Assembly (NCBI GenBank): GCA_977030845.1
Contig: OZ365115.1
Span: 2,046,001-2,110,000 of the forward strand
Origin: Fimbriosthenelais zetlandica
Taxonomy: Eukaryota
Direction of reading: 5' to 3'
Length of the DNA stretch: 64,000 bases
Part shown: positions 3,241 through 53,859 of the stretch, piece by piece
Layout of the letters: the number at the start of each line of letters is the position of its first letter
Position numbering within the stretch: the stretch's first letter is position 1
The notes under the pieces: model-generated
What the model was told of the DNA's origin: nothing
Databases searched by the model: none
Seen by the model: only the letters and a program-made list of their open reading frames with translations
Program-made: the position numbers and the translations under genes

Positions 3241-4705
3241 ATGGCAGAAGGGACAAAAACATGCGAATATCCTGATGGATTTGAATATGAAGGAAAGCAG
3301 TACGTAGAAGTTTTCCCATTGGATATACTGGAGAAAATAAAATACCAATTTGAACTGCGAGATGATGATGTTCTGATCACGACATATCCCAAATCAGGTA
3401 TAACGTCACTTTCAACCATTTTTCAGTTATATCATGACGGTGCCTACTTGTGACAGTGAGCCCAATGCTCTTTTATAGTGCTGTCTCACTGAGGTTTCAT
3501 GTCGCAGGTACATGACATGATATCTCACCCAGTCACATTATACTGACACCGGGTTGACCAGTCCTAGTACTGTCCTCTTTTTGCTGAGTGCCAAGCGAGG
3601 GAGCCATTAGTAGATACTGCAGCCTACATTGTACCCTTCTTCCTTTAGGCACAAGTTGGTTCATAGAGATAGTGTGGCTACTGATGAATGATGCAGATGT
3701 TGCTAAAGCAAATGAGACACCACAGGAAGCAAGGATTCCTCATATAGAAGCGAAGATACCTGATATGGTGAGTTAAAATCATCAGCTTCATTTTCAAAGC
3801 CCCCTAATCTGAAATGTAGATTCAAGTATAATACATAATTAACCGTAACGTTTCTCTTATTTGTTTACTATAAGAAACCGGAAGTAGAGAAACTTGAAGA
3901 ATGTGATTCACCTCGCATCATCAAGACCCACTTGTCGTTCGACTTCTTCCTGAGAGAGCTGAAACTGAACAAGAAGAAATCCAAGGTCATTCTGGGGGTC
4001 AGGAATCCTAAAGATACTCTCATCTCTTTCTACCATTTCCACAGAATGAATCCATTTCTCGCTGATGAATTTTTCGAATTCAGTGATTTTTATGAAATGT
4101 TTCAAAATAAACGTTTGCTATGTGGTGACTGGTTCGATCACGTACTTGACTACCAGAACAACTGTCATCATTTTGATCATTTCTGGCTGAAGTATGAAGA
4201 CCTGCACAAAGATTTTATGGGTACTATAAAACAACTGGCAGCTTTCCTGGGTAAGGAATTATCAGAGGAAAAGTTACAGGCGATAGCTAAACACGTGGCC
4301 TTTGATACGATGAAGGACAACAAGATGGTGAATAAGACGATATATCCGATCTTCAGAACTGATGTATCACCATTCATGAGAGAAGGGAAAGTGGGAGACT
4401 GGAAGAATCATCTTAGTGAAGAGCAGAGTGAATATATTGACAAGCTGTACACACAGAGAATAGAAGGTACAGGGCTGAACCTGGACTTCGAGTTGACTGA
4501 AACAGAGCAAAGGGAATATGCCACCCCAGAACCACTGCCGCTGGAAGATAACCATCAGGAAGATCACAAGCTGGAAGATTCAAAGTTGGAAGATATAAAA
4601 CTGGAAGATCCTAATTTGGAAGATGCAAAGCTGGAAGATTCGAAGCTGGAAGTTTCAGAGGAGAAGCATTTTGTTGCTTCTGAAACAATTGATACACATT
4701 TGTGA
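3241..4705 (+). CDS. SULT: Cytosolic sulfotransferase (Sulfotransfer_1 family), copy A. Exons 3241-3397, 3649-3767, 3875-4705; 368 aa including an acidic repeat tail
   Basis: The spliced ORF is continuous (157+119+831 nt) with GT..AG introns. 5'-PSB motif TYPKSG|TSW is split by intron 1. Also KTH (catalytic His), 3'-PB motif RNPKDTLIS, LKYEDL and C-terminal REGKVGDWKNH. Exon 1 and 2 lengths are identical to copy B. Confidence 0.95.
3398..3615 (-). mobile_element. 5'-truncated SINE filling most of SULT-A intron 1 (resembles V-domain-type invertebrate SINEs)
   Basis: The reverse complement reads ...CTCGCTTGGCACTCAGC..GGACTGGTCAACCCGGTGTCAGTATAATGTGACTGGGTG..CAGTGAGACAGCACTATAAAAG..CACCGTCATGATATAACTGAAAAATGGTTGAAAGTGACGTTATAC. 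I recognise this as a widespread invertebrate SINE body and tail. It is absent from the orthologous intron of copy B. Confidence 0.7.
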
Positions 4706-6523: not shown

Positions 6524-7685
6524 ATGGCAGAAGCGAAAAAAAGATATGAATATCCAAATTCATACGAATATGATGGAATATGCTATGTCGGGGACATTCC
6601 TCTGGAAGTCTTGGAGAAAGTTAAATACCAGTTTGAACTTCGAGACGACGACGTCCTTGTCATCACATATCCCAAATCAGGTACGATTTACATTAATAAG
6701 TTCAAAATCGGTTCAGATAATCTGGCCAAGGGACACCAACTTCGGTTGATCCACACAGAATCTGACACAGATGTTATCTCCAATCTCTTTCCAGGCACAA
6801 GTTGGTTCATCGAGATAGTGTGGCTACTGATGAATGATGCAGATGTTGATGCAGCCAGAAAGGCTTCTCAAGAAGCGAGAATTCCTACTCTAGAAGTTGT
6901 CCTACCCAATCTGGTAAGTAACGCATAGCACGATGATATTAATTGCAGCATTTTCTGGTTATATAATACGATAAAACCCCAAGCTTTCGGTATTTAATTT
7001 CCCGTGGCAAAATTGTTACAATTCTGTTCTTCTCTGTTAGAACAAACATGGCATAGGGACGCTAGAGGAATGTGACTCACCACGCGTCATGAGAACCCAC
7101 CTCAGGTCTGACTTCTTCCTGAGAGAACTCAAACTGAACAAGAAGAAAACAAAGGTCATCCTGGGGGTCAGGAATCCTAAAGATGTCCTAGTTTCCTTCT
7201 ATCACTTCCACAGAATGTATCCAGGGCTTGGAAACATGACTAAACCATTCAGTGATTTTTTCAAAATGTTTGAAGACAAACGTTTAGTGTATGGGGACTG
7301 GTTCGATCACGTACTTGACTACCAGAACAACTGTCATCATTTTGATCATTTCTGGTTGAAGTATGAAGACCTGCACAAAGATTTTATGGGTACTATAAAA
7401 CAACTGGCAGCTTTCCTGGGTAAGGAATTATCAGAGGAAAAGTTACAGGCGATAGCTAAACACGTGGCCTTTGATACGATGAAGGACAACAAGATGGTGA
7501 ATAAGACGATATATCCGATATTTAGGAATGACATCTCACCATATATTAGGAAGGGGAAGGTGGGAGACTGGAGGAACCATCTCAGTGAAGAGCAGAGTGA
7601 ATATATTGACAAGCTGTACAAAGAGAGGATTGAAGGTACAGGACTGAACCTGGACTTCCAGTTGACTGAGACAGAACAGGAATAA
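6524..7685 (+). CDS. SULT: Cytosolic sulfotransferase, copy B. Exons 6524-6680, 6795-6913, 7041-7685; 306 aa
   Basis: Spliced ORF of 157+119+645 nt with GT..AG introns. Motifs TYPKSG|TSW, RTHL, RNPKDVLVS, LKYEDL, RKGKVGDWRNH; ends TETEQE-TAA. Confidence 0.95.
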
Positions 7686-20305: not shown

Positions 20306-23300
20306 TCACCAGGGGCGCCACATGTCGTCCTGCCTCATGTCCAGGTCTCTATTGTCGTCTAATTGAGCACATGATGAGTCATCAGTTTTAGCCTCGTTAG
20401 ATGACTGATCATCATTTGATGACACCTCATCATCTAGTCCTGAATCGACACTCTCCGTCTCCTTCTTCATTATGACGTCACTTCCTGTTAGAGGTAAGAC
20501 ACTAATGACGTCACAATTTGTTCCTAAGGCAACGGAGAACTGATTCCGTGTTGGATTTGAATGTAAGTCTATGGGTGTTTCTGGGTTGCTTTGTTTTAAT
20601 CGTTCAGCACCGTTCATGCTAAGATCTAGCGGCAGGGATGGATCATGCGCAGGCTCCACTACCATGACAGTGTTTTCTTTTGTGTCAGCGACGCCAAGCG
20701 ACTCTCCCATCCGAACAAGGCAGTCATTCATGTGAGAGAGAATGTTCGTTTTGACAGTGTCCTCGATCTTGGGAATGTTGTTCAGGAAGTGGGCAATCTC
20801 CGAGGCACATTCAGTGAAACCTGCTTGGTATCGCGTAACAAGGTTCTCTCGGCTATCTGTAAATGAAAAAGAAAAAACGGTTATAATAATAGAATTGCCT
20901 CTATTCCGAGTTTACATTATGACGTCATAGGGATGTCGCAAAAGCTGCCAGTTTCTGGCAGAAAGTATGGAGAATACACCTTGTTCTGTGCGTACATGTT
21001 CATACGCCAGTGTCTAAGCACTATACCCTCTCTCAAACTAACGAGTATAGAAAGAAGCTCGTTGTTCAAACTAAGGACTAAGGACCTGAATTTTTGAAAA
21101 AGCTAATAAGAGAGGTAGTTAAGAGGTCACTGCATTAGACATCTCAGGGTCTTAACCGCTGAATTCTCTTCCTGGGGTGCCCCTGAATGGACTGCTACTG
21201 AGGGTCGAACCCACGGACCTCCATACAGATCCTACTAGCCACCTGTGCCGTCCAGTCTCCGCACCTGTTACCATGGCTACCCATGGTCTAAATCAAGATC
21301 CCCCACCTGTCAGTCTTATCGTTAACTAAGATCCCACCCAGCTTCCCAGCTGGCTGACCACGCCCTATGATTGACAGGTACAAATGGTGATTGACAGGTA
21401 CAAGCCACGCCCCCTCATTGTAGCACTGTCATTACACGCAAATGATGCTGTTAACAAGGTCTACATCCATAGACACAGTAGACATGAGTCCCATAATGAG
21501 CTACTATAGGATCTGATTAAAAGCCCTTAGTTTTTGACAAAACTCTTGATTTATATTCAGATAATTGTGATGGCCGTTAAGCATATGAGGGGCTGGCAGC
21601 AGTAACGACCAAACCAACAAATATATCACATTATCTTGGTCGTTTTGGGTCTTTTTTGTATATTTTGTGAGTGTTGGGCACTGAAATCCATCAGTATAAT
21701 AGTAAAATGTAGTCTATTCTCTGCAGTCCTTTCATTCTGTTCATTTTTTATCGGAAGAGGGCGTGATCTTATCATGCATTTTTGTTCCCAACCCACATCG
21801 CTTCTCTTTTCAAAGCGACATTTTGCTGAGATCCTTTCAGTTGATTACAAAATCTTGTCCATCTTGGGTCTCTTTGTCCAAGGGAGAACAATGTCAGTCA
21901 CGTGACTGATTGCTTCCTCATTGAGCCGGTAGAGGGCCAGGAATCCTCGCCTAATTTCACATCACATCCAACATATGGCACGTGTGTTCACAGGTCTGAG
22001 AAATGATGGCTTTAACCCTTTCTCACCGGATGCCTGCCCATAGAAACACCCATTGAAATGTCATTGAAGGTGGTAGTGAGATTAATGGTTAATTTAGCGG
22101 GCTTTAACCACCAATCAATGAAGTACTGACAACGTGTTCAGCCTCGCCCTTACACCAGATGATGTATCCGTCCCTGATCGCTCAGCGAACAGATGGATCA
22201 TGGAGAAAGACCCATTAAGAAATGGCTAACTTCAAAGGGTTAACTGTCACCAGGGCTGGGTTCATCCCTCATTAGCCAGTGATGATACTCAGAGGTATTC
22301 ACATATTTTGTTCAGGTACTTGGTGGATACAAGAAAGGTGAAATATGGGTCACCAAAAAGGGTGAACATTTCAAAAGAAATACATTTTAGATCGGCCTTA
22401 ACTGATTATTGGCATTATACCTGCCATTGTCAACTTGTTTTTATCCTTCCATGTTGCCTGTTAAATTAAGATAAATGACAGTAAAATCAGATGTCAGCTT
22501 GTAATTCCTGACATGCAGGGTATTATTCATTGCCCTGCTTTTAATATGTAGGCAATGTTTTGGTGAGTTGAACCCTATGTTTAAGGCCAGAGTCAAAAGG
22601 ACAGGTCAACAGTAAAGAGTATGTTCTGGAGGGGGGCAGTCCTCCCCACACTGACCGCCCTTCTCGTGATGAGGGCTGTAGTTCATCATTCACTCACCAG
22701 AGATCTCGTGCCCTCTCTCATCAAGGTCACATGACAATAGCCAGGAGCATTCTGGGTACAATCAGTGCCTCTCTGTGGCAGGTCCACAAACTATGGCCCC
22801 GCATTTCAGGGACACACCACTAGGGGGACGGGGATGTGGGTGTAAAACCGGAAGTGTTCGTATTAACGCGGTTACTATGACAACAAGCCTAAGGGACCCT
22901 ATGTTCTTGTTCCATGGCCGTGACGTGAAAGGCAACATCAAAAAGATGGCGGAGTGAACATCAAAGACCGGCATGCACTGCTTCACTGGTCAACTCCCCA
23001 GGGTTCCACGTTTCCAGGGACCAGACCTGGGAGGTAGGGGGTTTAAAAAGCTGGAGGGGTGAAGACAGAGGGGTAAATACCGTCCCCACTCATTGTCCCG
23101 CCCCCCTTGGACCTTATTTAGTCCCTTGTTTACTTGTCAACAACCTGTTACTTGGAGAGCAACTGCCAAAGGTTTGAGATCTTATCAAGTCCTTAGTAGA
23201 AAGAGAATAGATTATCTGGTGAGAGGGTGGTAGGGCATGATGACAGGTTGCCATGGTGATGCCCTGGAGGTGGGGGGGGGGGGGGTTATCTATCTACCTG

Positions 23301-26300
23301 TGTGGGTTTTTTTATCGTGATGTGGCCTATGGGAGATGGGGTTATTATGGGATGGCTTTGTTGAGATTGTACTTAGTTATTTTCCACTGTGTAGCATTGT
23401 GTTTGAAACGTGTACTCACAAAAAAACGAAACTACCTCATTATGTTTTATCTCTGACTAAAGAATTAGAATTACGGACCGTTTAGGTGATTGATGGGACC
23501 AGGGTTTATATTATCTGACAACATCTTTCAATTAACCTTGCAGAGTTAACTTTACAAATTTTAATGTATAATTATGAACAAAATATGGAGAAATGAATGA
23601 GGTGGACAAAACTTAAATTGTGACAAAATTCTACGAAATGAATGGCAACAGAAAGAATTGGCTCCTAGCCAATTTCATTTCTAAGCAAGTAAATAAAATG
23701 AAATGTCAGCAAAATGAAAGAAACTTACCATCATTTTGTTGTGATTTCAGAGTCTTCAGGTGGTTCACTGTCATTTCCAAGATGTCTGCCTTTTCTAACC
23801 GGTTATAACAAGCAGGCTGCAAAAAACAAAACAAAAATCTCATCAATATAAGGCTTTTGTCCATTGTTCTCATTCTAAAAACATAAACTTATTTTTCTGG
23901 GGACAAATATCGCAAAGTTCACTTCTGGAATTTTAATTTTGACTTCTAGTTTTCGTGAAGGATTCAGTTTCATATAATCGTTAGCCCTAAGTGAAAATAT
24001 ACCCTATTTTCATTTCAGCCAAGGGGGATTGTCTACCTTTTGAAAAGAAGACAATTTTAAAAGGTTCAACCTTTGATGGACTCAGGGAAATAGGATACGG
24101 GCGGGTGGGGAGTAGCAATAACCAATTGTCGACCCATTCAGGCATGTGACAAAATACGGGCAATTAACGAGGATCAGATTCACAAAAAACACACTTAAAT
24201 GATACACGCCTAAACGGAGCAGAAAGAGTCATCACAAGCAAGCCTTTGTTAAATAGCTTTTGGTGCTCAACTGCAAAAATGTGAACCCAAACTTTGGATA
24301 CATTTCCTTTCACCCCTTTTACCCTCATTACCGATAGAATAGACTAGCCAAAGTCTTGTCTTAATATTCCTAATTATTAATAGGCTGATTTGCACTTCAG
24401 TTCCGATTTAGCATTGTACTTCAGTTCCGATTTATTTGAATATAGATTTCGTAATTAATTTTTTTTTCAAATGTTAAAGTAATTAAATTACTGGTACAAT
24501 TATTACGAATTGTATAACTGATGTGCAAAAAGCACAATCAAAAGAACTGCCAGAAATTGAACTGTTATATTTTAATTGTTAAATTATATCTATATCTATG
24601 TAAGGACTAGTAGCTGCCATTTTTTAAAACGTTTCTGGGAGGAAACAAAGTTAGGGAATGTAACCAAGAGCAAGTCTATTTCGGTTGAAGAGTGGAAAGG
24701 AAGTAGCAAGTGAGGCTTTATTTTCCTGAACAAAGCTTCATTTGGCTGAACCAAGCCGAGCTTTATATTGTAAGCCAAAAGAAACACACAGTAGGACTGG
24801 CTACAATCCAGGCGTGCTAATGATGCTTCTATTATAGCGTCACTCCTTCCTCCTCCCAGCCCGCCGTTCATAAAGAAAGTAGCCACCTCCCAACTGCCCC
24901 CCTTAACTCTTAACAACCTGGCCATTTCCAAAATAAAGAAGATCCAGTGATTTGTTCCGAATTTATCCACCTATCAATTTTCCATTAACATCCAACAAAC
25001 AGAGTAAAATAGTACAAATCAACGATATAATATTTATGTTAAAAATTATAAATTATCATCAGTAATTTTTAAAAAGGCAGAGCTCGCGTGCGCGCTGTAG
25101 CATCCACATGCAACGGACCATTCCAACAGGCCCAGTGTTGCGCGATGCAGAATAAGTGGACGTTAGGGCAGAGGTATAAGAAAGACATTAGTCCTGGCGC
25201 AGTTAGCCATATGGTGTAGGGGGTTATAATAGTCAGTCCTGGTAGAGAAGTAATCACAGAGTGGTAGGTGAGAGATGGTCCTACAACATATGGTAGGGGG
25301 TGGAGGGGTATGGCCGAACAACGACCAAGTATTTATGACACTCGAGAAGACCCCTTAACGATCTTGACCACTATCATAAATATGGAAATTGACTCAGATT
25401 TTGTACTTGACAATTTCAAGAGTAAACAAGGCAAAGATTTGAAATTTAAACAAAGATTCTAAAAGGAGACTGTTACGAAATGATACCTGTAACTGCGAGA
25501 TGCTCTCACGACACAGAGATTTCATAGAGAAGGGAAATACCAGAAGAGTCTGTATTTCTACATATTCAACATTTTTGGGATTATCAGAACAGCATAATTT
25601 CTGAATTAATCATTTCCATTGAGCTAACTAGTCAAATCATCATAAAATCAATAATTACCATAGTTTTTTTCTCAGAAAACTAAAAGAGTAAATATAGGCG
25701 CCTATTTTCTTACTCCACTACATTTGTTTCATTGAAAGTTTCAATCAATCGCGTCGAATAAAAAGCTGAATTTAGATATGATTCTCATTGAAAAACAATC
25801 TACATCTTGTGAGATTTCATATATTCAGATCCCAACCATAGTGTCCCCTCGTACTGAAGTCTTCTTCTAAAAGCTGTTGGTCTTTTAAAGGTCATTTAAA
25901 GGTTATACACTTTGTAAGTCTATAATACACGTGTACACCTACCCACACCCCCAGCAACCGTTCACCTGTGTGTGAACATAAAGGTGTGTGTGGGACATAT
26001 ACACATGCGTGTGTAGAGAGGCTGGGATGGTAGTATATGTCTCCACTCATACACTAATCATTAAGTTTGTCGCTATGCATCTTGGGGCAGGATGGCGGTG
26101 TCTCAGTCAATGTTTGCCCCTGATGAGATTGTCATTGTCATGCAAGCAGGATTCTGCTCTCTGTGTTATAGGATATCTCGCCTCACACAAACACTTTGTT
26201 GGTGATTTAGAGCGCTGAGACACGCACTCATACACGACCAAGCTGAGATTTAAAACACCCCAAACCCTCTCACACACACCGGCTTACAACTCTAAAACTT

Positions 26301-27783
26301 TCACTAATCCTTCTCCGTTATGCAAGTTTTATTTTAAATCAAATTAAAATCTGTTGTAACAATATACTTGGGAGATATATCGTATGCTCTGTCATGAAAT
26401 TGCTTATGTAATTTCAAGTGGTTTTCTTAATCAATCATTGATTTGATCTGTCTAAATCATTTTATGTTGGTTAGCTTATTTCCATTCTGCTGAAAAAGAC
26501 CAATAGGGCCTACCTGAAACATATCTCTGATGGGAATCTTAAGACATGAAGACCACTTGACATTACAAGCTTTGTGCATAGCTACAGACGGGGAAGAGGT
26601 CAGAGATGGCAGTTATGTAACAGTATCACTTAAAATTAAAGTTAAAAACACTTACATCTTTCTTGAGTCCTTCGAGTACTAGTGATTTAAGCTGGGTGAG
26701 GGAGCTGTTGATTCGGGCTCTCCTCCTCCGCTCTATCAAGTGTTTGTTAGCCTGCAAGGTAACAACCACCATTAACAAACAAATACAAACATTTATCATG
26801 GCTTTAATATGTAAAATGTACACAATAGACAATCAATAATAAATATAATACACGGGCAATATATGACACTCATATGTCCCCAAAGTACAGTATCCTTCTG
26901 TTTTACCTTTGTATTCGGTGTATGTCTCAGAAGAAGTAAAAACAGTACAAGTAGGCCTATATGTGACCATATAATGTAGGCAATGAAACAACACCCTAAT
27001 CAATTTAATTGATATATGTATCAAATAACCTCTAATATCACCCAGGTGTGCCATTCCCAAATGTTATTTCAATACTCTACCCTATATGAGACACCAACAG
27101 GTTGACAAGTATCACATTACAAAATAGGAGGTGAGGGGGAAAGCTATATTTGTATTTATAATAGATTTCACTGAATCTGTTCATCCAGCTGTGACAGTGT
27201 GTAGGGATAGTATGACAGTGATTTGCCCGTACATTGCTGTCACGCTCTAGCTGTCACAAGGCTGTCACAGACAGTGACAGTACAAATCTTGCTCATTTTA
27301 TGACCTCGACCTGTTACTCAGTACCCGCATATCCCAAAGGCACTTCATTTTCTCTGTCACTCTAGTTCCTTGATTTTCTATACTGGCAGCTCAGTCAAGA
27401 AAGCTAGACCAGTTCCCTTGATTTATTGTCAAGATCACAATGTCATAATGCCACTACGAAGGACCATAATGTATATCAGACCTGTAATCAAACTCTTTAT
27501 ATTTTTATTATTTTATATTGATGTCTTGTAATATTTTAAACTGATATTTTAAGTTAGTTTAACTTAATAATGTAACATAACACTCCGTTCATATCGGTGA
27601 TGTCTTTTAGCACATCAATGATATAGATAGTGTCACAAATATTAGGCCAAGTTCCTATCTTGAAATTACACCTTCTCAAATAAAATCAAAACAAAATCTC
27701 ACCCTTCTTTTGCTGACTCCACGGGGGCTGCCCTCGGTCACGTGATCGTCCATTTGGTCGTCCATGTCGACCTCCAGCTTCAT
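20306..27783 (-). CDS. HES: Hairy/Enhancer-of-split (HES) family bHLH-Orange repressor. Exons 27783-27703, 26751-26656, 23816-23729, 20856-20306; 271 aa
   Basis: Exon 1 MKLEVDMDDQMDDHVTEGSPRGVSKRR|gtgag. Exon 2 (96 nt) ANKHLIERRRRARINSSLTQLKSLVLEGLKKD|gtaag. Exon 3 (88 nt) PACYNRLEKADILEMTVNHLKTLKSQQND|gtaag. Exon 4 has the Orange domain RYQAGFTECASEIAHFLNNIPKIEDTVKTNILSHMNDCL and ends WRPW-TGA. All junctions are GT-AG and in frame; the 96/88-nt exon pattern matches HES1-type genes. Confidence 0.96.
22016..22239. mobile_element. Possible piggyBac-like MITE in HES intron 3
   Basis: TTAA-CCCTTT...AAAGGG-TTAA; a similar end (GAGAAAGAAAGGGTTAA) occurs near 55831-55847. Confidence 0.35.
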
Positions 27784-28552
27784 GCTCCACACACACACTG
27801 CTCCAGTAGGGTACAATAGTCTATGGCAAACACACACTCCTCCAATAGGTCACTATAGTCTATGGCAAGTTGTCTAGTCGTTTCTTTCTCAGTAATATTA
27901 GGTTAAAAACCTATTCTTCCAGTAAAAGTTTCAATTGAAAGTTTCCTGGGTGTACTAAAAGAAGATTTTGCTCAGGATAAACATGAATCAGGCGACTGGC
28001 AGTTGTTATCAACAACGAGACATATCCAACGTAAGAGATGAAAGTAAACTCCTTGAACTTTCCCCAAAAGCTTTTACAAAAAGTGACACTTTGTAAACGA
28101 TATTTGTTCCGTCCTCAGCGAATATAAAATAAATCCAGAAATAAATCAAAAGGTATAGCAGTAAAATGTCATGACTTGGTAGAAGGCGATACGCTCTGCA
28201 TATTGGTATTGCATGTCCCTATGAGCAATCCTCCATATGTCTGTTGTCATCGATGCAAAGCAACTCAATTGTCAAGTCCCTGTATGCACTTGTTGCAATC
28301 CAAAATCCTGTTAAAAAATAACAGTCCGATGTCAGTGGAGAAATCCTTCAGAAGTTATATGAAATTTTGTGTAAAAGTTGTTTTTCCAAGTTGATGTTTT
28401 TGCTCCAAGTTGATGTTTGATAGAATGTGTAGGTAGGTAAATCTCTCTTAAAGGTTCCCTCAGTGAAGGGTTAGATATAGGAAGGGTGAGCAGTGACTAC
28501 CCTGGTGAAGGGTGGAGGGGTAAGTAAGACCAAGATGTGGGTCTACCTGTCC

Positions 28553-30744: not shown

Positions 30745-33700
30745 TAATGGAAGTACCTTGATAGAACCACTTAAAGGTGCACCGGATTTTTTTCAGCTTT
30801 TTTCCCAGTTCATTGTTAATTTAATTGTGCCCTAAAGTTCAAGTACGGCAGGTATAGGCGAATATAATATGTCTTACATTAAAATATAAGCGAATGAATA
30901 CCAAGTATTAAAAATACAGGTCCACTCCGAAAATTAGCCATATTTTGAATCGATAATGAATGGCATTTTTTTTTGCTAAAAGAGGGAGGCAGACATCTTT
31001 GAAGTCTTTTCATTGTGGCACACATTCTTTTGCTCATTTACTGCATTTTGCTGATGGGCAAATGATTAAAGGGTCCAAGTCAGTGGTGAGTACAATACCA
31101 CCGTTAGTTCCCTGCCTGCCCACCCCCCACCTCCCAGACGGCCTGAGTGACAGCTCCACATATTGTGTACGTATCTATACCTCTAATGGGATAAGGTACG
31201 GTCAAAGCGGCCGGTCACTCACTCACAGAAAAACTTTTGAGATGTTTAAAAAGTTTTCTGAAATACGCCCATTAGGCTTCATCTGATGCTGCTAAAATAT
31301 GAAGTAAAATAATTATAGTAATTATGGTAAAAGCAAGTGGGGAATGAAGAAATTTCATATTGAATCCAGAAATAAAATTATCGCTTGAACTTACTAAGAT
31401 TATCATTGCAAAAACTAGAAAGAAATTGTGAAAATAAGAAGATATAGCCTTACTTGAGTCCACAAAAAATATTACAAATTTAAGCTCAATTCTATCAAGA
31501 AAATATAGTATATAGCCTATTACACATGTTCAATATTCAATATTCAATATTGATCAATCTTACACTGACCCATTAAATAATTACTCGTAGATTCCCTGAC
31601 CCACACAATTTTGATATTCTACCAAATTCTTAATTCTTCTCATCATTAATAATGAAGGGATTTTGATGATTTTGGAGAGCAAAACGAGTTTTTAAATTAT
31701 TTCAAAAGAAATCTATTAAAACCTTAATAATGAAGCAGAACGTCCATCAATACCTCAAAATGAGAATTACAGGTAATAAAGGACTTTGAAGTAATTTAAC
31801 ATTTTAGACATTCTCCGACAAGTACTTGTAATTATGACACATTTCGAGGCCTTTAATTTTCCCATGGTTTGCCAAAACATAAACCTGTAGCTTGACCACT
31901 TCACCCACCCTCCCTCTATACCATGGTATATACCTTTAATATATATACTTAGACCCCCTAGCCCACCCCCTGACTTTGACCAACCGCTCCCAGCCATTGT
32001 TACTATTGCCATTGTTCCTCACCGCCCTCCAACCCCGCGGGACACGCCAAAAGAGGGAATTCACCAGGGAGGAAACGGCACTTCAAAGTTGCGAGCAAAA
32101 TACGGAAGGTACATAAACAGGGAAAATTAAATCCCTCGGGCCCTGAAGGGTTGGTTAATGAATAGATATGAAACGATGTGTAATTTGGCAAACAAAGGGG
32201 TTCGGTTGGGGTTCCCAGTACCTGCTCGACCACTTGGGACAAGTTGAGTGGGGAAGAGGTGTGGTGGGGCTTTGAAAAAGGACGGGATGAAAATGTGGGA
32301 AATGGTCACTAAGGGGGTGTGACAGTGAGAGGAAGAGAGGGGCCCCCGGGGGTAAAGTCCCCCTAGAGTCAGTGCTAAAAATCTACCCGGCCTTGACCAG
32401 TCCCACCCTCAATTGGTGAGCGTCCATTTGCTTTAGTGATCAGCCACCCAGGTGTGCAAAAAGTGAACAAAAGCTGCAACTGACCAGAAAATGCTTCCAC
32501 TGAGTTAAATATGGTTCTATGTGTTCTCCTGGAAAACATGCATGGGAATAAATGTCTGCAAGGGAGCTGGTATACAAGATTCTTATATTCTGATATACGA
32601 TACGACCTGCATTAGGTTAGTCTGCAGACGGCGGAATCAAAGATTCTGCCTCTTTTGCTTCTTTGTCGGGAATTCCGATTGGTGACCACAGCAACAATGA
32701 GTGGAGAAGGGGATTAAAAAGTTGAAGTACAATGGGCATTTTTGATGTAGAATATAGAGTGAAGAGAGTGTCATATTTGACATAAACTGGACCACGCCTT
32801 GGGATACAGGCTCTGTCCAGTAAATGCCCTTCAAACCTTTCACAAGTAGCCAACTCGCTTTGAGGTACATTTTTGATATACTCAGATATGGTAACGGCCA
32901 TTCTACTCTAGGCTGACTTTTAAAATTTAAATTCAGCTGATACCTTATAGTAATGCCATGAAAATATTTTGTGCTTTGTGAATTATACTATTCCAAATAT
33001 ATATGTCTAAACTAATATAAATATATCTTGATTTACAAAACTGAAATCAATATGATAAAACATTCTCATATCCTAATAACTTAAACTGATTTAAATCAGA
33101 TGAGAATAGTTTTACATGTATTCCATTTCTCTTTTACAAAGCAACTTGATGATAGCATGAGTCTGCATCAACTTGCTGTCTATTGCTTTGTGCCAAAATT
33201 AATATAGGTTTAAATATAGACTTAAAGAAAATCTAGGCGTTATATTATGTCCTTAACAGCTTTGTGTTTATATATAAGACACTGCTGTAATAGTAATGTG
33301 GTATTGTTCATAATGATACATTCATACAATGACATGATTACATCGTGAATAAAATGCTAAGCTCAAAATGCCATAAGCTTTCTGCACTGTCCACAAACAA
33401 TGAACTGTATGATTATGAATTAATGTTTTGATTTCATTGATTCAGACAACGCCTGCCATATCCTGACAAACAAGGGAAAGGTAACAACTTAAACAAGTGT
33501 TCAATTCACTTCCAACCAATCCCTGATTTAAATTTTATCTTGATGACAATAAAATAAATGACAATAATTGCTCCGTCCATTATGAATTAAGGACCCATTA
33601 TCACATACCTTTTTTAGCGTCAAGAATACTTATTCTTAAGAATTTTTTTATCTGGAACTGGGCCAGCAAATACAAATTTAATACCTAAAATAATTAAACT

Positions 33701-45376: not shown

Positions 45377-45657
45377 CACGGTAAAAAAGATGGTTATTAC
45401 AGTACTCAATACTGAGCTGAAGTGTACACTGTAAAAACAGATGGTTATTACACCACTCATTACTGAGCTGAAGTGTACACTCTAAAAAGAGATGGTTATT
45501 ACACCACTCATTACTGAGCTGAAGTGTACACTGTAAAAAGAGATGGTTATTACACCACTCATTAAAGACATGAATCGTACACTGTAAAAAGAGATGTTTA
45601 TTACACCATTTCAGAGATGAAACATGAATTTTGCACTGTAGAGAGTAATGGTTATTT
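45377..45657. repeat. 51-bp minisatellite, about 5.5 copies
   Basis: Unit ACACTGTAAAAAGAGATGGTTATTACACCACTCATTACTGAGCTGAAGTGT; outer copies are degenerate. Confidence 0.9.
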
Positions 45658-52340: not shown

Positions 52341-52842
52341 ATAATTAGTAGCTAACCACTTGTATGAATCAAGGATGCACATTTATAATTAGTAGCTTAC
52401 TACTATAGCCTTGTATGAATCAAGGATGCACATTTATAATTAGTAGCTGACCACTATAGCCTTGTATGAATCAAGGATGCACATTTATAATTAGTAGCTG
52501 ACTACTATAGCCTTGTATGAATCAAGGATGCACATTTATAATTAGTAGCTGACCACTATAGCCTTGTATGGATCAAGGATGCACATTTATAATTAGTAGC
52601 TGACTACTATAGCCTTGTATGAATCAAGGATGCACATTTATAATTAGTAGCTTACTACTATAGCCTTGTATGAATCAAGGATGCACATTTATAATTAGTA
52701 GCTGACCACTATAGCCTTGTATGGATCAAGGATGCACATTTATAATTAGTAGCTGACTACTATAGCCTTGTATGAATCAAGGATGCACATTTATAATTAG
52801 TAGCTGACTACTATAGCTTGTATGAATCAAGGATGCACATTT
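52341..52842. repeat. 51-bp minisatellite, 10 copies
   Basis: AAGGATGCAC recurs at 52371, 52422, 52473 ... 52779, then 52829; near-identical units. Confidence 0.97.
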
Positions 52843-53696: not shown

Positions 53697-53859
53697 TTAT
53701 TTTTATTTGAACTGATCAGTTAATATAATCAAAGTCCTTTCTGTTATTTTTATTTGAACTGATCAGTTAATATAATCAAAGTCCTTTCTGTTATTTTTAT
53801 TTGAACTGATCAGTTAATATAATCAAAGTCCTTTCTGTTATTTTTATTTGAACTGATCA
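53697..53859. repeat. 47-bp tandem repeat, about 3.5 copies, each carrying the palindrome AACTGATCAGTT
   Basis: GAACTGATC at 53709, 53756, 53803, 53850. Confidence 0.95.

What the first reader, a model, noticed from the sequence alone, without database searches (positions are those of the whole stretch)
26725..26751. HES gene lacking the diagnostic basic-region proline (K-H-L-I-E-R-R-R instead of K-P-x-x-E-K-R-R)
Seen: exon 2 encodes ANKHLIERRRRARIN within an otherwise complete HES protein (bHLH, Orange, WRPW, HES1-type exon sizes). Known: Hairy/HES proteins are defined by Pro at this position, linked to N-box/class-C binding; HEY has Gly and HELT has Lys there. Inference: His at this site plus the K-to-R change after the Glu could shift DNA specificity, for example toward CACGTG E-boxes, marking a divergent HES subfamily.
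Basis: partly seen in the sequence, partly recalled or inferred. Interest (0 to 1): 0.7.

Follow-up and report, generated by a model that had tools for sequence, protein, structure and literature searches.

The report
HES gene with His-for-Pro swap
This animal (probably an annelid worm) has an intact Hairy/HES-type repressor gene in which the textbook "invariant" proline of the DNA-binding region is a histidine. The change is real and inherited, and three sister genes and relatives in other species share it, but its effect on DNA binding has not been tested.

Summary
Observation confirmed. A four-exon gene on the minus strand (CDS exons of 81, 96, 88 and 551 nt, all GT-AG) encodes a 271-aa protein with bHLH, Orange domain and C-terminal WRPW. 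Basic-region position 6 is His (CAC, 26742-26740).

It is not an assembly slip:
- Three more WRPW-type genes 190-220 kb away on the same chromosome read N-K-H, and a fifth reads K-V.
- Seven other HES genes in this genome keep K-P.
- N-K-H is also found in one spliced mRNA contig and two other assemblies.
- The His codon alternates CAC/CAT, and synonymous sites between orthologues are saturated or near saturation, so His looks selected.

All 75 named or unnamed HES relatives with a readable basic region, other than these, have Pro. The closest named relative is Platynereis Hes8, which has Pro.

The K-to-R change is not special, because Pro-bearing relatives also have E-R. The predicted shift toward CACGTG is untested, and Pro-bearing E(spl) proteins already prefer that site.

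No public reads were listed, so expression in this species is unverified. I found no paper describing the variant. Verdict: a new variant of a known kind, of moderate interest.

The parts
27703..27783 (-). Exon 1, coding part (81 nt, 27 aa, M-K-L-E-V-D...K-R-R). The ATG is at 27783-27781 and the donor is AGG|gtgag. The transcription start was not determined.
26656..26751 (-). Exon 2 (96 nt, 32 aa): basic region plus helix 1, A-N-K-H-L-I-E-R-R-R-R-A-R-I-N... It keeps K5, E9 and R13 and has His at position 6.
   Evidence: 100% self-hit
26740..26742 (-). CAC codon for His at basic-region position 6, where Hairy/HES proteins have Pro.
23729..23816 (-). Exon 3 (88 nt): loop end and helix 2 (…N-R-L-E-K-A-D-I-L-E-M-T-V-N-H-L-K…). 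Acceptor ttgcag|, donor |gtaagt, ends in phase 1.
20306..20856 (-). Exon 4, coding part (551 nt including the stop): Orange domain, acidic/Ser-rich tail with P-L-D-L-S, and terminal W-R-P-W followed by TGA.

Best explanation
SHOWN: this is an intact, selectively maintained member of the Hes branch of the bHLH-Orange superfamily. I call it HesH1 here. The Pro-to-His change needs only one base change (CCY to CAY). His is fixed and inherited. HesH1 belongs to a lineage-restricted set of Pro-less, WRPW-bearing HES genes lying together at C25:2.07-2.30 Mb: four with K-H and one with K-V. Its closest named relative is Platynereis Hes8, which has Pro.

INFERRED mechanism: the protein dimerises through HLH plus Orange and reads a CAC half-site with the retained K5/E9/R13. 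It represses by recruiting Groucho/TLE through the terminal WRPW, and possibly CtBP through PLDLS. Position 6 is a base-contacting position in bHLH-DNA co-crystals, and Pro6 is predicted to force an unusual basic-helix geometry. His6 should therefore give a regular, continuous basic helix with an extra hydrogen-bonding side chain in or near the major groove. My best guess is that binding to CACGTG and CACGCG (class B and C sites) is kept. I expect binding to the degenerate N-box (CACNAG) to be weakened, as in Gly6 Hey proteins, possibly with a new preference for flanking bases. I put about 0.9 on the genomic and evolutionary part and about 0.4 on the specific DNA-binding consequence.
For: The gene model has canonical splice sites and no stops or frameshifts. 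The Orange domain passes Pfam's cut-off and WRPW is terminal. The intron pattern (two in the bHLH, one before Orange) matches Pdu-Hes1 to Pdu-Hes10 (PMC4172395).

The own genome gives twelve exon-2 matches: four K-H, seven K-P and one Hey. A cwo/Stich-type gene and the K-V gene turned up separately.

Other sources carry the His too. P0003 is a spliced 349-aa mRNA product from run SRR2014689 that reads A-N-K-H-L-M-E-R-R-R-R and ends in WRPW. P0002/P0052 (ERZ26222911) read A-N-K-H-L-I-E-R-R-R-R. L018 and L029 (ERZ25767047) read F-N-K-H-M-A-E-K and F-N-K-H-I-A-E-R.

The His codon alternates CAC/CAT across these genes. In orthologue pairs dS is saturated (undefined) or 1.07, with dN about 0.3. Over that divergence an unconstrained codon would not be expected to stay His.

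Trees: the F-N-K-H genes form a clade (100/99). HesH1, Pdu-Hes8 and P0003 group together (81/98). All HES rows are separated from Hey plus cwo (97-99/92-93).

Literature: positions 1, 2, 5, 6, 8, 9, 12 and 13 are base-contacting, Pro6 is predicted to be incompatible with the canonical helix, and position 10 makes phosphate contacts only (PMC3113581). Hey proteins with Gly6 bind class B sites but only weakly bind the N-box (PMC1950541).
Against: No RNA or read data could be obtained for this species, so expression and splicing of this copy are inferred from the ORF and from the mRNA of another species. No DNA-bound HES structure exists among solved structures; only the free HES-1 bHLH (2MH3) and Orange domain (7C4O) are available. 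AlphaFold2 monomer models run a helix through position 6 in both the His6 protein and the Pro6 protein, so they show no clear geometric difference. From memory, and not checkable here because the papers are not held, Drosophila work suggested that the basic-region Pro is not essential for Hairy/E(spl) function. That would favour a near-neutral change. No Su(H)-type site lies within about 4.5 kb upstream, and the window-wide count equals chance, so regulation by Notch is not supported.
Confidence: 0.55

Rival explanations
1. Near-neutral substitution. His6 is tolerated because Pro6 is not needed for HES function. The protein would bind the same sites and act like any Pro-bearing paralogue, and the clade differs only in where and when it is expressed (subfunctionalised tandem duplicates).
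For: HES families expand by tandem duplication with divergent expression (PMC4172395). E9, R13 and K5 are unchanged. The AlphaFold2 models of the His6 and Pro6 proteins look alike. From memory, unverified: Drosophila mutagenesis found the proline dispensable.
Against: His has been retained in at least four paralogues and their orthologues across saturated synonymous divergence, with the codon itself changing CAC/CAT. That argues for constraint on His specifically and not just tolerance. Position 6 is base-contacting in co-crystals.
Confidence: 0.3
2. Partner-modulating HES. The His6 proteins act mainly as heterodimer partners or antagonists of Pro-bearing HES proteins, as Hes6 does toward Hes1. 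On this reading they would not be autonomous DNA-binding repressors.
For: Three of the four His6 genes have a weak or undetectable Orange domain (18.1 bits, or no hit, against a 25.3-bit cut-off). One His6 gene (H2) has R-R-P-W in place of W-R-P-W. This suggests relaxed or altered function in the cluster.
Against: HesH1 itself keeps a full basic region (K5, E9, R10-R13), a good Orange domain and a terminal WRPW.
Confidence: 0.1
3. Decaying duplicate (pseudogene) whose diagnostic residue has drifted.
For: It is one of at least twelve HES-type genes in the genome. No expression data exist for this species.
Against: The ORF is intact with four canonical splice junctions. An orthologue-like mRNA is spliced and full length in another species. 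dN/dS is about 0.3 or lower where it can be measured. The bHLH is 62% identical to Pdu-Hes8 over 100 columns.
Confidence: 0.04
4. Assembly or sequencing error, or a rare allele of a Pro codon.
For: None beyond the lack of a read-level check.
Against: The same residue is present in three paralogues of the same assembly and in three independent data sets from other sources.
Confidence: 0.01

Closest known systems
Platynereis dumerilii Hes8 (UniProt S5TRL6 / AGS55442; Gazave et al. 2014, PMC4172395)
   Same: It is the closest named relative: 62% identity over 100 bHLH-Orange columns and a shared clade with 81/98 support. It shares E-R-R-R-R-A-R-I-N, the Y-N-R-L-E-K-A-D-I-L-E-M-T-V-N-H-L-K stretch, the Orange domain, WRPW and the three-intron pattern.
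   Different: Pdu-Hes8 has the canonical K-P where this gene has K-H. The C-terminal halves are not detectably similar.
Canonical Hairy/E(spl)/HES1 proteins (class VI or group E bHLH)
   Same: Same architecture of bHLH, Orange and terminal WRPW. K5, E9 and R13 are shared. The exon 2 and 3 sizes (96 and 88 nt) match my recollection of HES1. The HES-1 bHLH (2MH3) and Orange domain (7C4O) are the top solved-structure hits for the orthologue-like P0003.
   Different: It lacks the 'invariant' proline that reviews use to define the class (PMC1950541; PMC6317319). No Su(H) sites were found near the promoter.
Hey/HERP proteins
   Same: They are also bHLH-Orange proteins without Pro6 (Gly6 instead). 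They give the only experimental precedent for what losing Pro6 does: class B binding is kept and N-box binding is weak.
   Different: Hey has Gly6, Y-R-P-W plus a T-E-I-G-A-F tail, and a different intron pattern. This genome's own Hey gene is on C21 and separates from all HES rows in the tree.
Pdu-Hes11, Hes12 and Hes13 (Platynereis HES genes without an Orange domain and with only the two bHLH introns)
   Same: The three F-N-K-H genes in the cluster have the same structure: two introns, helix 2 fused to the C-terminal exon, and a weak or absent Orange domain (PMC4172395).
   Different: I could not obtain their sequences, so whether they carry His6 is unknown. My profile search for F-N-K-H relatives returned only unnamed proteins.

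Membership tests
Hes family (Hairy/E(spl), bHLH-Orange superfamily) | bHLH domain with a DNA-binding basic region (E9, R13) | tested here: met
   The sequence reads K5-H6-L-I-E9-R-R-R-R13 followed by helix 1, loop and helix 2. The orthologue-like P0003 carries Pfam HLH and hits the HES-1 bHLH structure 2MH3 at E 8e-17.
Hes family (Hairy/E(spl), bHLH-Orange superfamily) | Proline at basic-region position 6 (the 'invariant proline', defining for class VI bHLH) | tested here: not met
   His (CAC) at 26742-26740. Seven other HES genes of the same genome have Pro.
Hes family (Hairy/E(spl), bHLH-Orange superfamily) | Orange domain C-terminal to the bHLH | tested here: met
   Pfam PF07527, E 2.9e-11, 43.9 bits against a cut-off of 25.3. 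The genome search gives 46.3 bits at C25:2066717-2066833.
Hes family (Hairy/E(spl), bHLH-Orange superfamily) | C-terminal WRPW tetrapeptide (Groucho/TLE binding) | tested here: met
   The protein ends ...D-D-M-W-R-P-W followed by a stop. Actual Groucho binding cannot be tested here.
Hes family (Hairy/E(spl), bHLH-Orange superfamily) | Conserved intron positions: two inside the bHLH and one between bHLH and Orange | tested here: met
   CDS exons of 81, 96, 88 and 551 nt match the pattern described for Pdu-Hes1 to Pdu-Hes10 (PMC4172395).
Hes family (Hairy/E(spl), bHLH-Orange superfamily) | Falls with Hes and not with Hey, Stich or Dec in a tree | tested here: met
   Hey plus cwo/Stich are split from all HES rows with 97-99/92-93 support. 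The nearest row is Pdu-Hes8. Position 6 was left out of the tree.
Hes family (Hairy/E(spl), bHLH-Orange superfamily) | Binds N-box or class C/B sites and represses | not testable with these tools
   This needs EMSA, SELEX or reporter assays.
Notch-responsive HES/E(spl) genes | Su(H)/RBPJ sites (YGTGRGAA, often paired) in the proximal promoter | tested here: inconclusive
   The window holds 8 matches against 8.2 expected by chance. The nearest upstream match is at 32294, about 4.5 kb from the ATG, and there is no paired site. The transcription start is unknown.
Hey family | Gly at position 6 and a Y-R-P-W...T-E-I-G-A-F C-terminus | tested here: not met
   His6 and terminal WRPW. The Hey signature is described in PMC4172395.
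Helt family | H-K at positions 5-6 and no WRPW (from memory) | tested here: not met
   K-H at positions 5-6 and WRPW present.

The most novel reading that the evidence does not exclude
A conserved cluster of five Groucho-recruiting HES repressors, probably annelid-restricted, has replaced the helix-distorting Pro6 with a base-contacting residue (His in four genes, Val in one). On this reading it has gained a DNA-site preference different from both canonical HES and Hey proteins. That would make it a separate functional class of bHLH-Orange repressor and a natural experiment on what the 'invariant' proline is for.
Probability: 0.25. Interest if true: 0.6.

Novelty: new variant of a known kind. 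Interest (0 to 1): 0.4.

Why it matters
Pro6 is the textbook signature of Hairy/HES (class VI) bHLH repressors. It is thought to explain their unusual N-box and class C binding, yet no DNA-bound HES structure exists and the role of the proline is still inferred. A naturally occurring group that is kept by selection and is otherwise canonical (bHLH, Orange, WRPW), but carries His6, offers matched protein pairs for a direct test. HesH1 can be compared with Pdu-Hes8, or His6 genes with Pro6 paralogues in one genome, by SELEX, PBM or EMSA and by structure determination. It also warns that annotation rules which rely on Pro6 to call HES genes will mislabel such members. If the change turns out to be functionally neutral, the finding is a minor addition to the known diversity of lophotrochozoan HES expansions.

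Tried and rejected
1. Read-level check. The look-up of sequencing runs listed no run, either for the whole gene (kind any) or for exon 4 plus 3' flank (kind rna) (one search failed as busy). Read laying was therefore never used. None was listed, which is not the same as none existing.
2. A word-indexed protein search with exon 4 found nothing. The C-terminal half evolves fast, and the length window excluded the 349-aa P0003.
3. Search for named orthologues carrying His. The search with P0003 residues 1-130 returned 36 proteins, and every one with a readable basic region, other than P0003 itself, had Pro. The profile of F-N-K-H C-terminal exons returned only unnamed ENA and Logan proteins.
4. 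DNA for assembly ERZ26222911 could not be fetched because the file is too large. The HesH1 orthologue there is known only from its exon-2 ORF and a downstream Orange ORF.
5. One origin or two for His. The best tree separates HesH1 from the F-N-K-H clade, but forcing all His6 rows together is not rejected (p-AU 0.41), and HesH1 plus P0003 as sisters is not rejected either (p-AU 0.31). This stays unresolved with about 100 columns.
6. AlphaFold2 models of the His6 protein (P0003 residues 1-130) and the Pro6 protein (Pdu-Hes8 residues 1-150). Both show one continuous basic/helix-1 helix (H5-37 and H20-49). pLDDT around position 6 is higher in the His6 model (92 against 77 for the 10-residue block). 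This is not decisive and I do not use it as evidence.
7. The Su(H) site scan gave chance level.
8. Literature. I found no paper mentioning a His-for-Pro HES. Gazave et al. 2014 discuss Gly6 of Hey but not Pro6 variants, and their supplements hold no sequences. The classic Drosophila mutagenesis papers (PMC364440, PMC230947, PMC402140) are not held, so my recollection that the proline is dispensable is unverified.
9. Organism. It was not identified directly. 'Probably annelid' rests on Pdu-Hes8 being the nearest named protein and on other agents' notes. Run SRR2014689 is named in no searchable paper.

Full report
**1. What is in the sequence**

The gene lies on the minus strand. Exon 2 (26751-26656, 96 nt) sits between ...ttgcag| and |gtaagt. 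It reads A-N-K-H-L-I-E-R-R-R-R-A-R-I-N-S-S-L-T-Q-L-K-S-L-V-L-E-G-L-K-K-D.

The other coding parts are:
- Exon 1: 27783-27703, 81 nt, beginning with ATG.
- Exon 3: 23816-23729, 88 nt, helix 2 (...L-E-K-A-D-I-L-E-M-T-V...).
- Exon 4: 20856-20306, 551 nt including the stop.

Together they give an 816-nt reading frame with four canonical GT-AG junctions and no internal stop. The product is 271 aa and ends in W-R-P-W. Exon 4 matches Pfam Hairy_orange above the curated cut-off (43.9 against 25.3 bits).

In standard bHLH numbering the basic region is K5-H6-L7-I8-E9-R10-R11-R12-R13. The His codon is CAC at 26742-26740. The window contains only this one bHLH exon and one WRPW, so no alternative Pro-bearing exon exists.

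**2. The His is not an error**

The window lies at C25:2,046,001-2,110,000 of a 447-Mb assembly. Searching the genome with the exon-2 peptide gave twelve HES-type exon-2 matches:
- Seven read K-P, as canonical HES genes do.
- One is the Hey gene.
- Four read N-K-H: this gene, and three others at C25:2,262,405(-), 2,283,018(+) and 2,293,897(+).

A Pfam Orange search pointed to one more gene, at about 2,273,350. Its exon 2 reads M-K-K-V-Q-V-E-R-H-R-R-E-R-I-N, with Val at position 6, and it also ends in WRPW.

So five Pro-less HES genes with a WRPW-type C-terminus (degenerate in one) lie within about 230 kb. The three F-N-K-H genes have lost the intron between helix 2 and the Orange region. Their Orange domains are intact in one and weak or undetectable in the other two (48.1 bits, 18.1 bits and no hit).

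**3. Conservation in other species**

An exhaustive phmmer search of exon 2 against 1.84 billion cluster representatives returned 51 proteins. Forty-six have K-P and three have K-H:
- P0003 is a 349-aa product of a 1,223-nt Logan contig from run SRR2014689. Its bHLH is contiguous, so the RNA is spliced. It reads A-N-K-H-L-M-E-R-R-R-R and ends in WRPW.
- P0002/P0052 come from ENA assembly ERZ26222911. They read A-N-K-H-L-I-E-R-R-R-R, 91% identical to the query, and an Orange-domain ORF lies about 3 kb downstream.
- P0021, from ENA assembly ERZ25767047 (locus L018), is the orthologue of the 2.262-Mb gene and reads F-N-K-H-M-A-E-K. Both share the C-terminal D-R-C-V-P-V-P...R-P-W-D-R-P-V-S-V.

A second locus of ERZ25767047 (L029) is the orthologue of the 2.283-Mb gene and reads F-N-K-H-I-A-E-R.

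The His codon alternates CAC and CAT among these six genes. Between orthologue pairs dS is undefined (saturated) or 1.07, with dN about 0.3. Over that much divergence a codon free to drift would not be expected to stay His, so the residue appears to be under purifying selection.

**4. Relationships**

I built a maximum-likelihood tree from about 100 columns (exon 2, helix 2 and Orange), leaving position 6 out.
- The F-N-K-H genes form a clade (100/99).
- This gene groups with Platynereis Hes8 and P0003 (81/98). Pdu-Hes8 is the nearest row, at 62% identity.
- All HES rows are split from Hey plus cwo/Stich (97-99/92-93).

Pdu-Hes8 has K-P, so the switch in the HesH1 lineage happened after the split from the Platynereis lineage. 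Whether His arose once for the whole cluster or twice is unresolved. Forcing all His6 rows into one clade is not rejected (p-AU 0.41). A Pro-to-His change needs only a single C-to-A change at the second codon position, so convergence is plausible.

'Probably annelid' rests on this nearest named relative and on other agents' notes. I did not identify the species.

**5. Comparison with what is known**

Reviews call the proline 'invariant' and use it to define class VI bHLH proteins (PMC1950541; PMC6317319; PMC8431614). Among 40 full-length WRPW proteins that I fetched from many phyla, 39 have Pro6, and the single exception is P0003. None of the His6 sequences carries a name in any source.

Gazave et al. 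2014 catalogue 15 Platynereis Hes/Hey genes. They note Gly6 as the Hey signature but say nothing about Pro6 variants. They describe Hes11 to Hes13 as lacking Orange and having only the two bHLH introns, which is the structure of the F-N-K-H genes here. I could not get those sequences to see whether they carry His. My literature searches found no description of a His6 HES.

**6. How it probably works**

Shown: the architecture, and retention of K5, E9 and R10-R13.

Inferred from family knowledge: dimerisation through HLH and Orange, recognition of a CAC half-site, and repression through Groucho/TLE recruited by WRPW.

De Masi et al. list position 6 among eight base-contacting positions in bHLH-DNA co-crystals. 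They predict that Pro6 is incompatible with the canonical helix, which implies a different conformation in Hairy-type proteins. Position 10 makes phosphate contacts only (PMC3113581). His6 should therefore restore a regular basic helix and add a hydrogen-bonding side chain next to the DNA.

The only experimental precedent for a Pro-less bHLH-Orange protein is Hey (Gly6). Hey keeps class B binding and binds N-boxes weakly. My best guess is therefore retained CACGTG and CACGCG binding with reduced N-box binding, at about 40% confidence.

- The K10-to-R10 change is not distinctive. Pdu-Hes8 and three Pro-bearing paralogues here also read E-R.
- 'Toward CACGTG' is not a real shift, because Pro-bearing E(spl) proteins already prefer that site.

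AlphaFold2 monomer models of a His6 and a Pro6 protein both show one continuous helix, so they do not discriminate. No DNA-bound HES structure has been solved. No Su(H) sites lie near the promoter beyond chance, so regulation by Notch is not indicated.

**7. Limits**

- No public run was listed for this stretch, so I have no read-level or expression check for this species.
- The spliced protein has no single reference, so searches used exons or the orthologue-like P0003, as the operators advised.
- My recollection that Drosophila mutagenesis found the proline dispensable could not be verified. If correct, it favours the near-neutral rival.

**8. Verdict**

The 'divergent subfamily' reading is supported and extended to a five-gene Pro-less cluster conserved across species. 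The DNA-specificity inference remains an untested hypothesis, and part of it was mis-specified. This is a new variant of a known kind, of moderate interest. Its main value is as a ready-made natural test of what the HES proline does.

Noticed in passing
G000:C25:2,262,000-2,300,000 (loci L013, L015, L016, L025), outside the window: Four more Pro-less HES genes lie in a cluster here. Three read F-N-K-H and have only two introns and a weak or absent Orange domain. One reads M-K-K-V-Q-V-E-R-H-R-R (Val6, His11) and ends in WRPW. In two of them the W-R-P-W-type motif is followed by a short conserved tail (D-R-P-V-S-V or E-G-Q-S-S-A) and is not terminal.
   Followed up: partly
L013:8543-9235 (-) = G000:C25, about 2,261,5xx: The 2.262-Mb His6 gene ends ...Y-D-G-R-R-P-W-D-R-P-V-S-V, so the first Trp of the Groucho motif is Arg. 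The unnamed near-identical protein P0088 has the same R-R-P-W. The orthologues in ERZ25767047 and P0089 keep M-W-R-P-W. This may be a lineage-specific loss of Groucho binding.
   Followed up: partly
window 27791-27868: A 39-bp unit is repeated twice (87% match) 8 bp upstream of the HesH1 start codon, in the presumed 5' UTR or promoter. Its function is unknown.
   Followed up: no
window 20306-20632 (-): The HesH1 tail contains P-L-D-L-S (CtBP-type), P-I-D-L-H and D-S-G-L-D-D ahead of WRPW, as another note of this scan says (s1-210774). The motifs are present in my translation. P-I-D-L-R-H also recurs in the F-N-K-H orthologues (L013, L018).
   Followed up: partly
window 3932-4705 (+) and 7089-7685 (+): Two tandem ORFs match the C-terminal two-thirds of Pfam Sulfotransfer_1 (E 8e-47 and 1e-49). 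They are probably the last exons of two tandemly duplicated cytosolic sulfotransferase genes.
   Followed up: no
window 52359-52842, 45377-45608 and 53697-53859: Well-preserved tandem arrays with 47-51-bp units (9.5, 4.6 and 3.5 copies, 91-100% match) lie in intergenic sequence.
   Followed up: no
G000:C25: Ten of the twelve exon-2 matches, and the extra K-V gene, lie on one chromosome-scale contig, in groups at 2.07-2.30, 7.27, 11.91-11.92 and 35.58-35.68 Mb. This fits the tandem-duplication history described for lophotrochozoan HES genes.
   Followed up: partly
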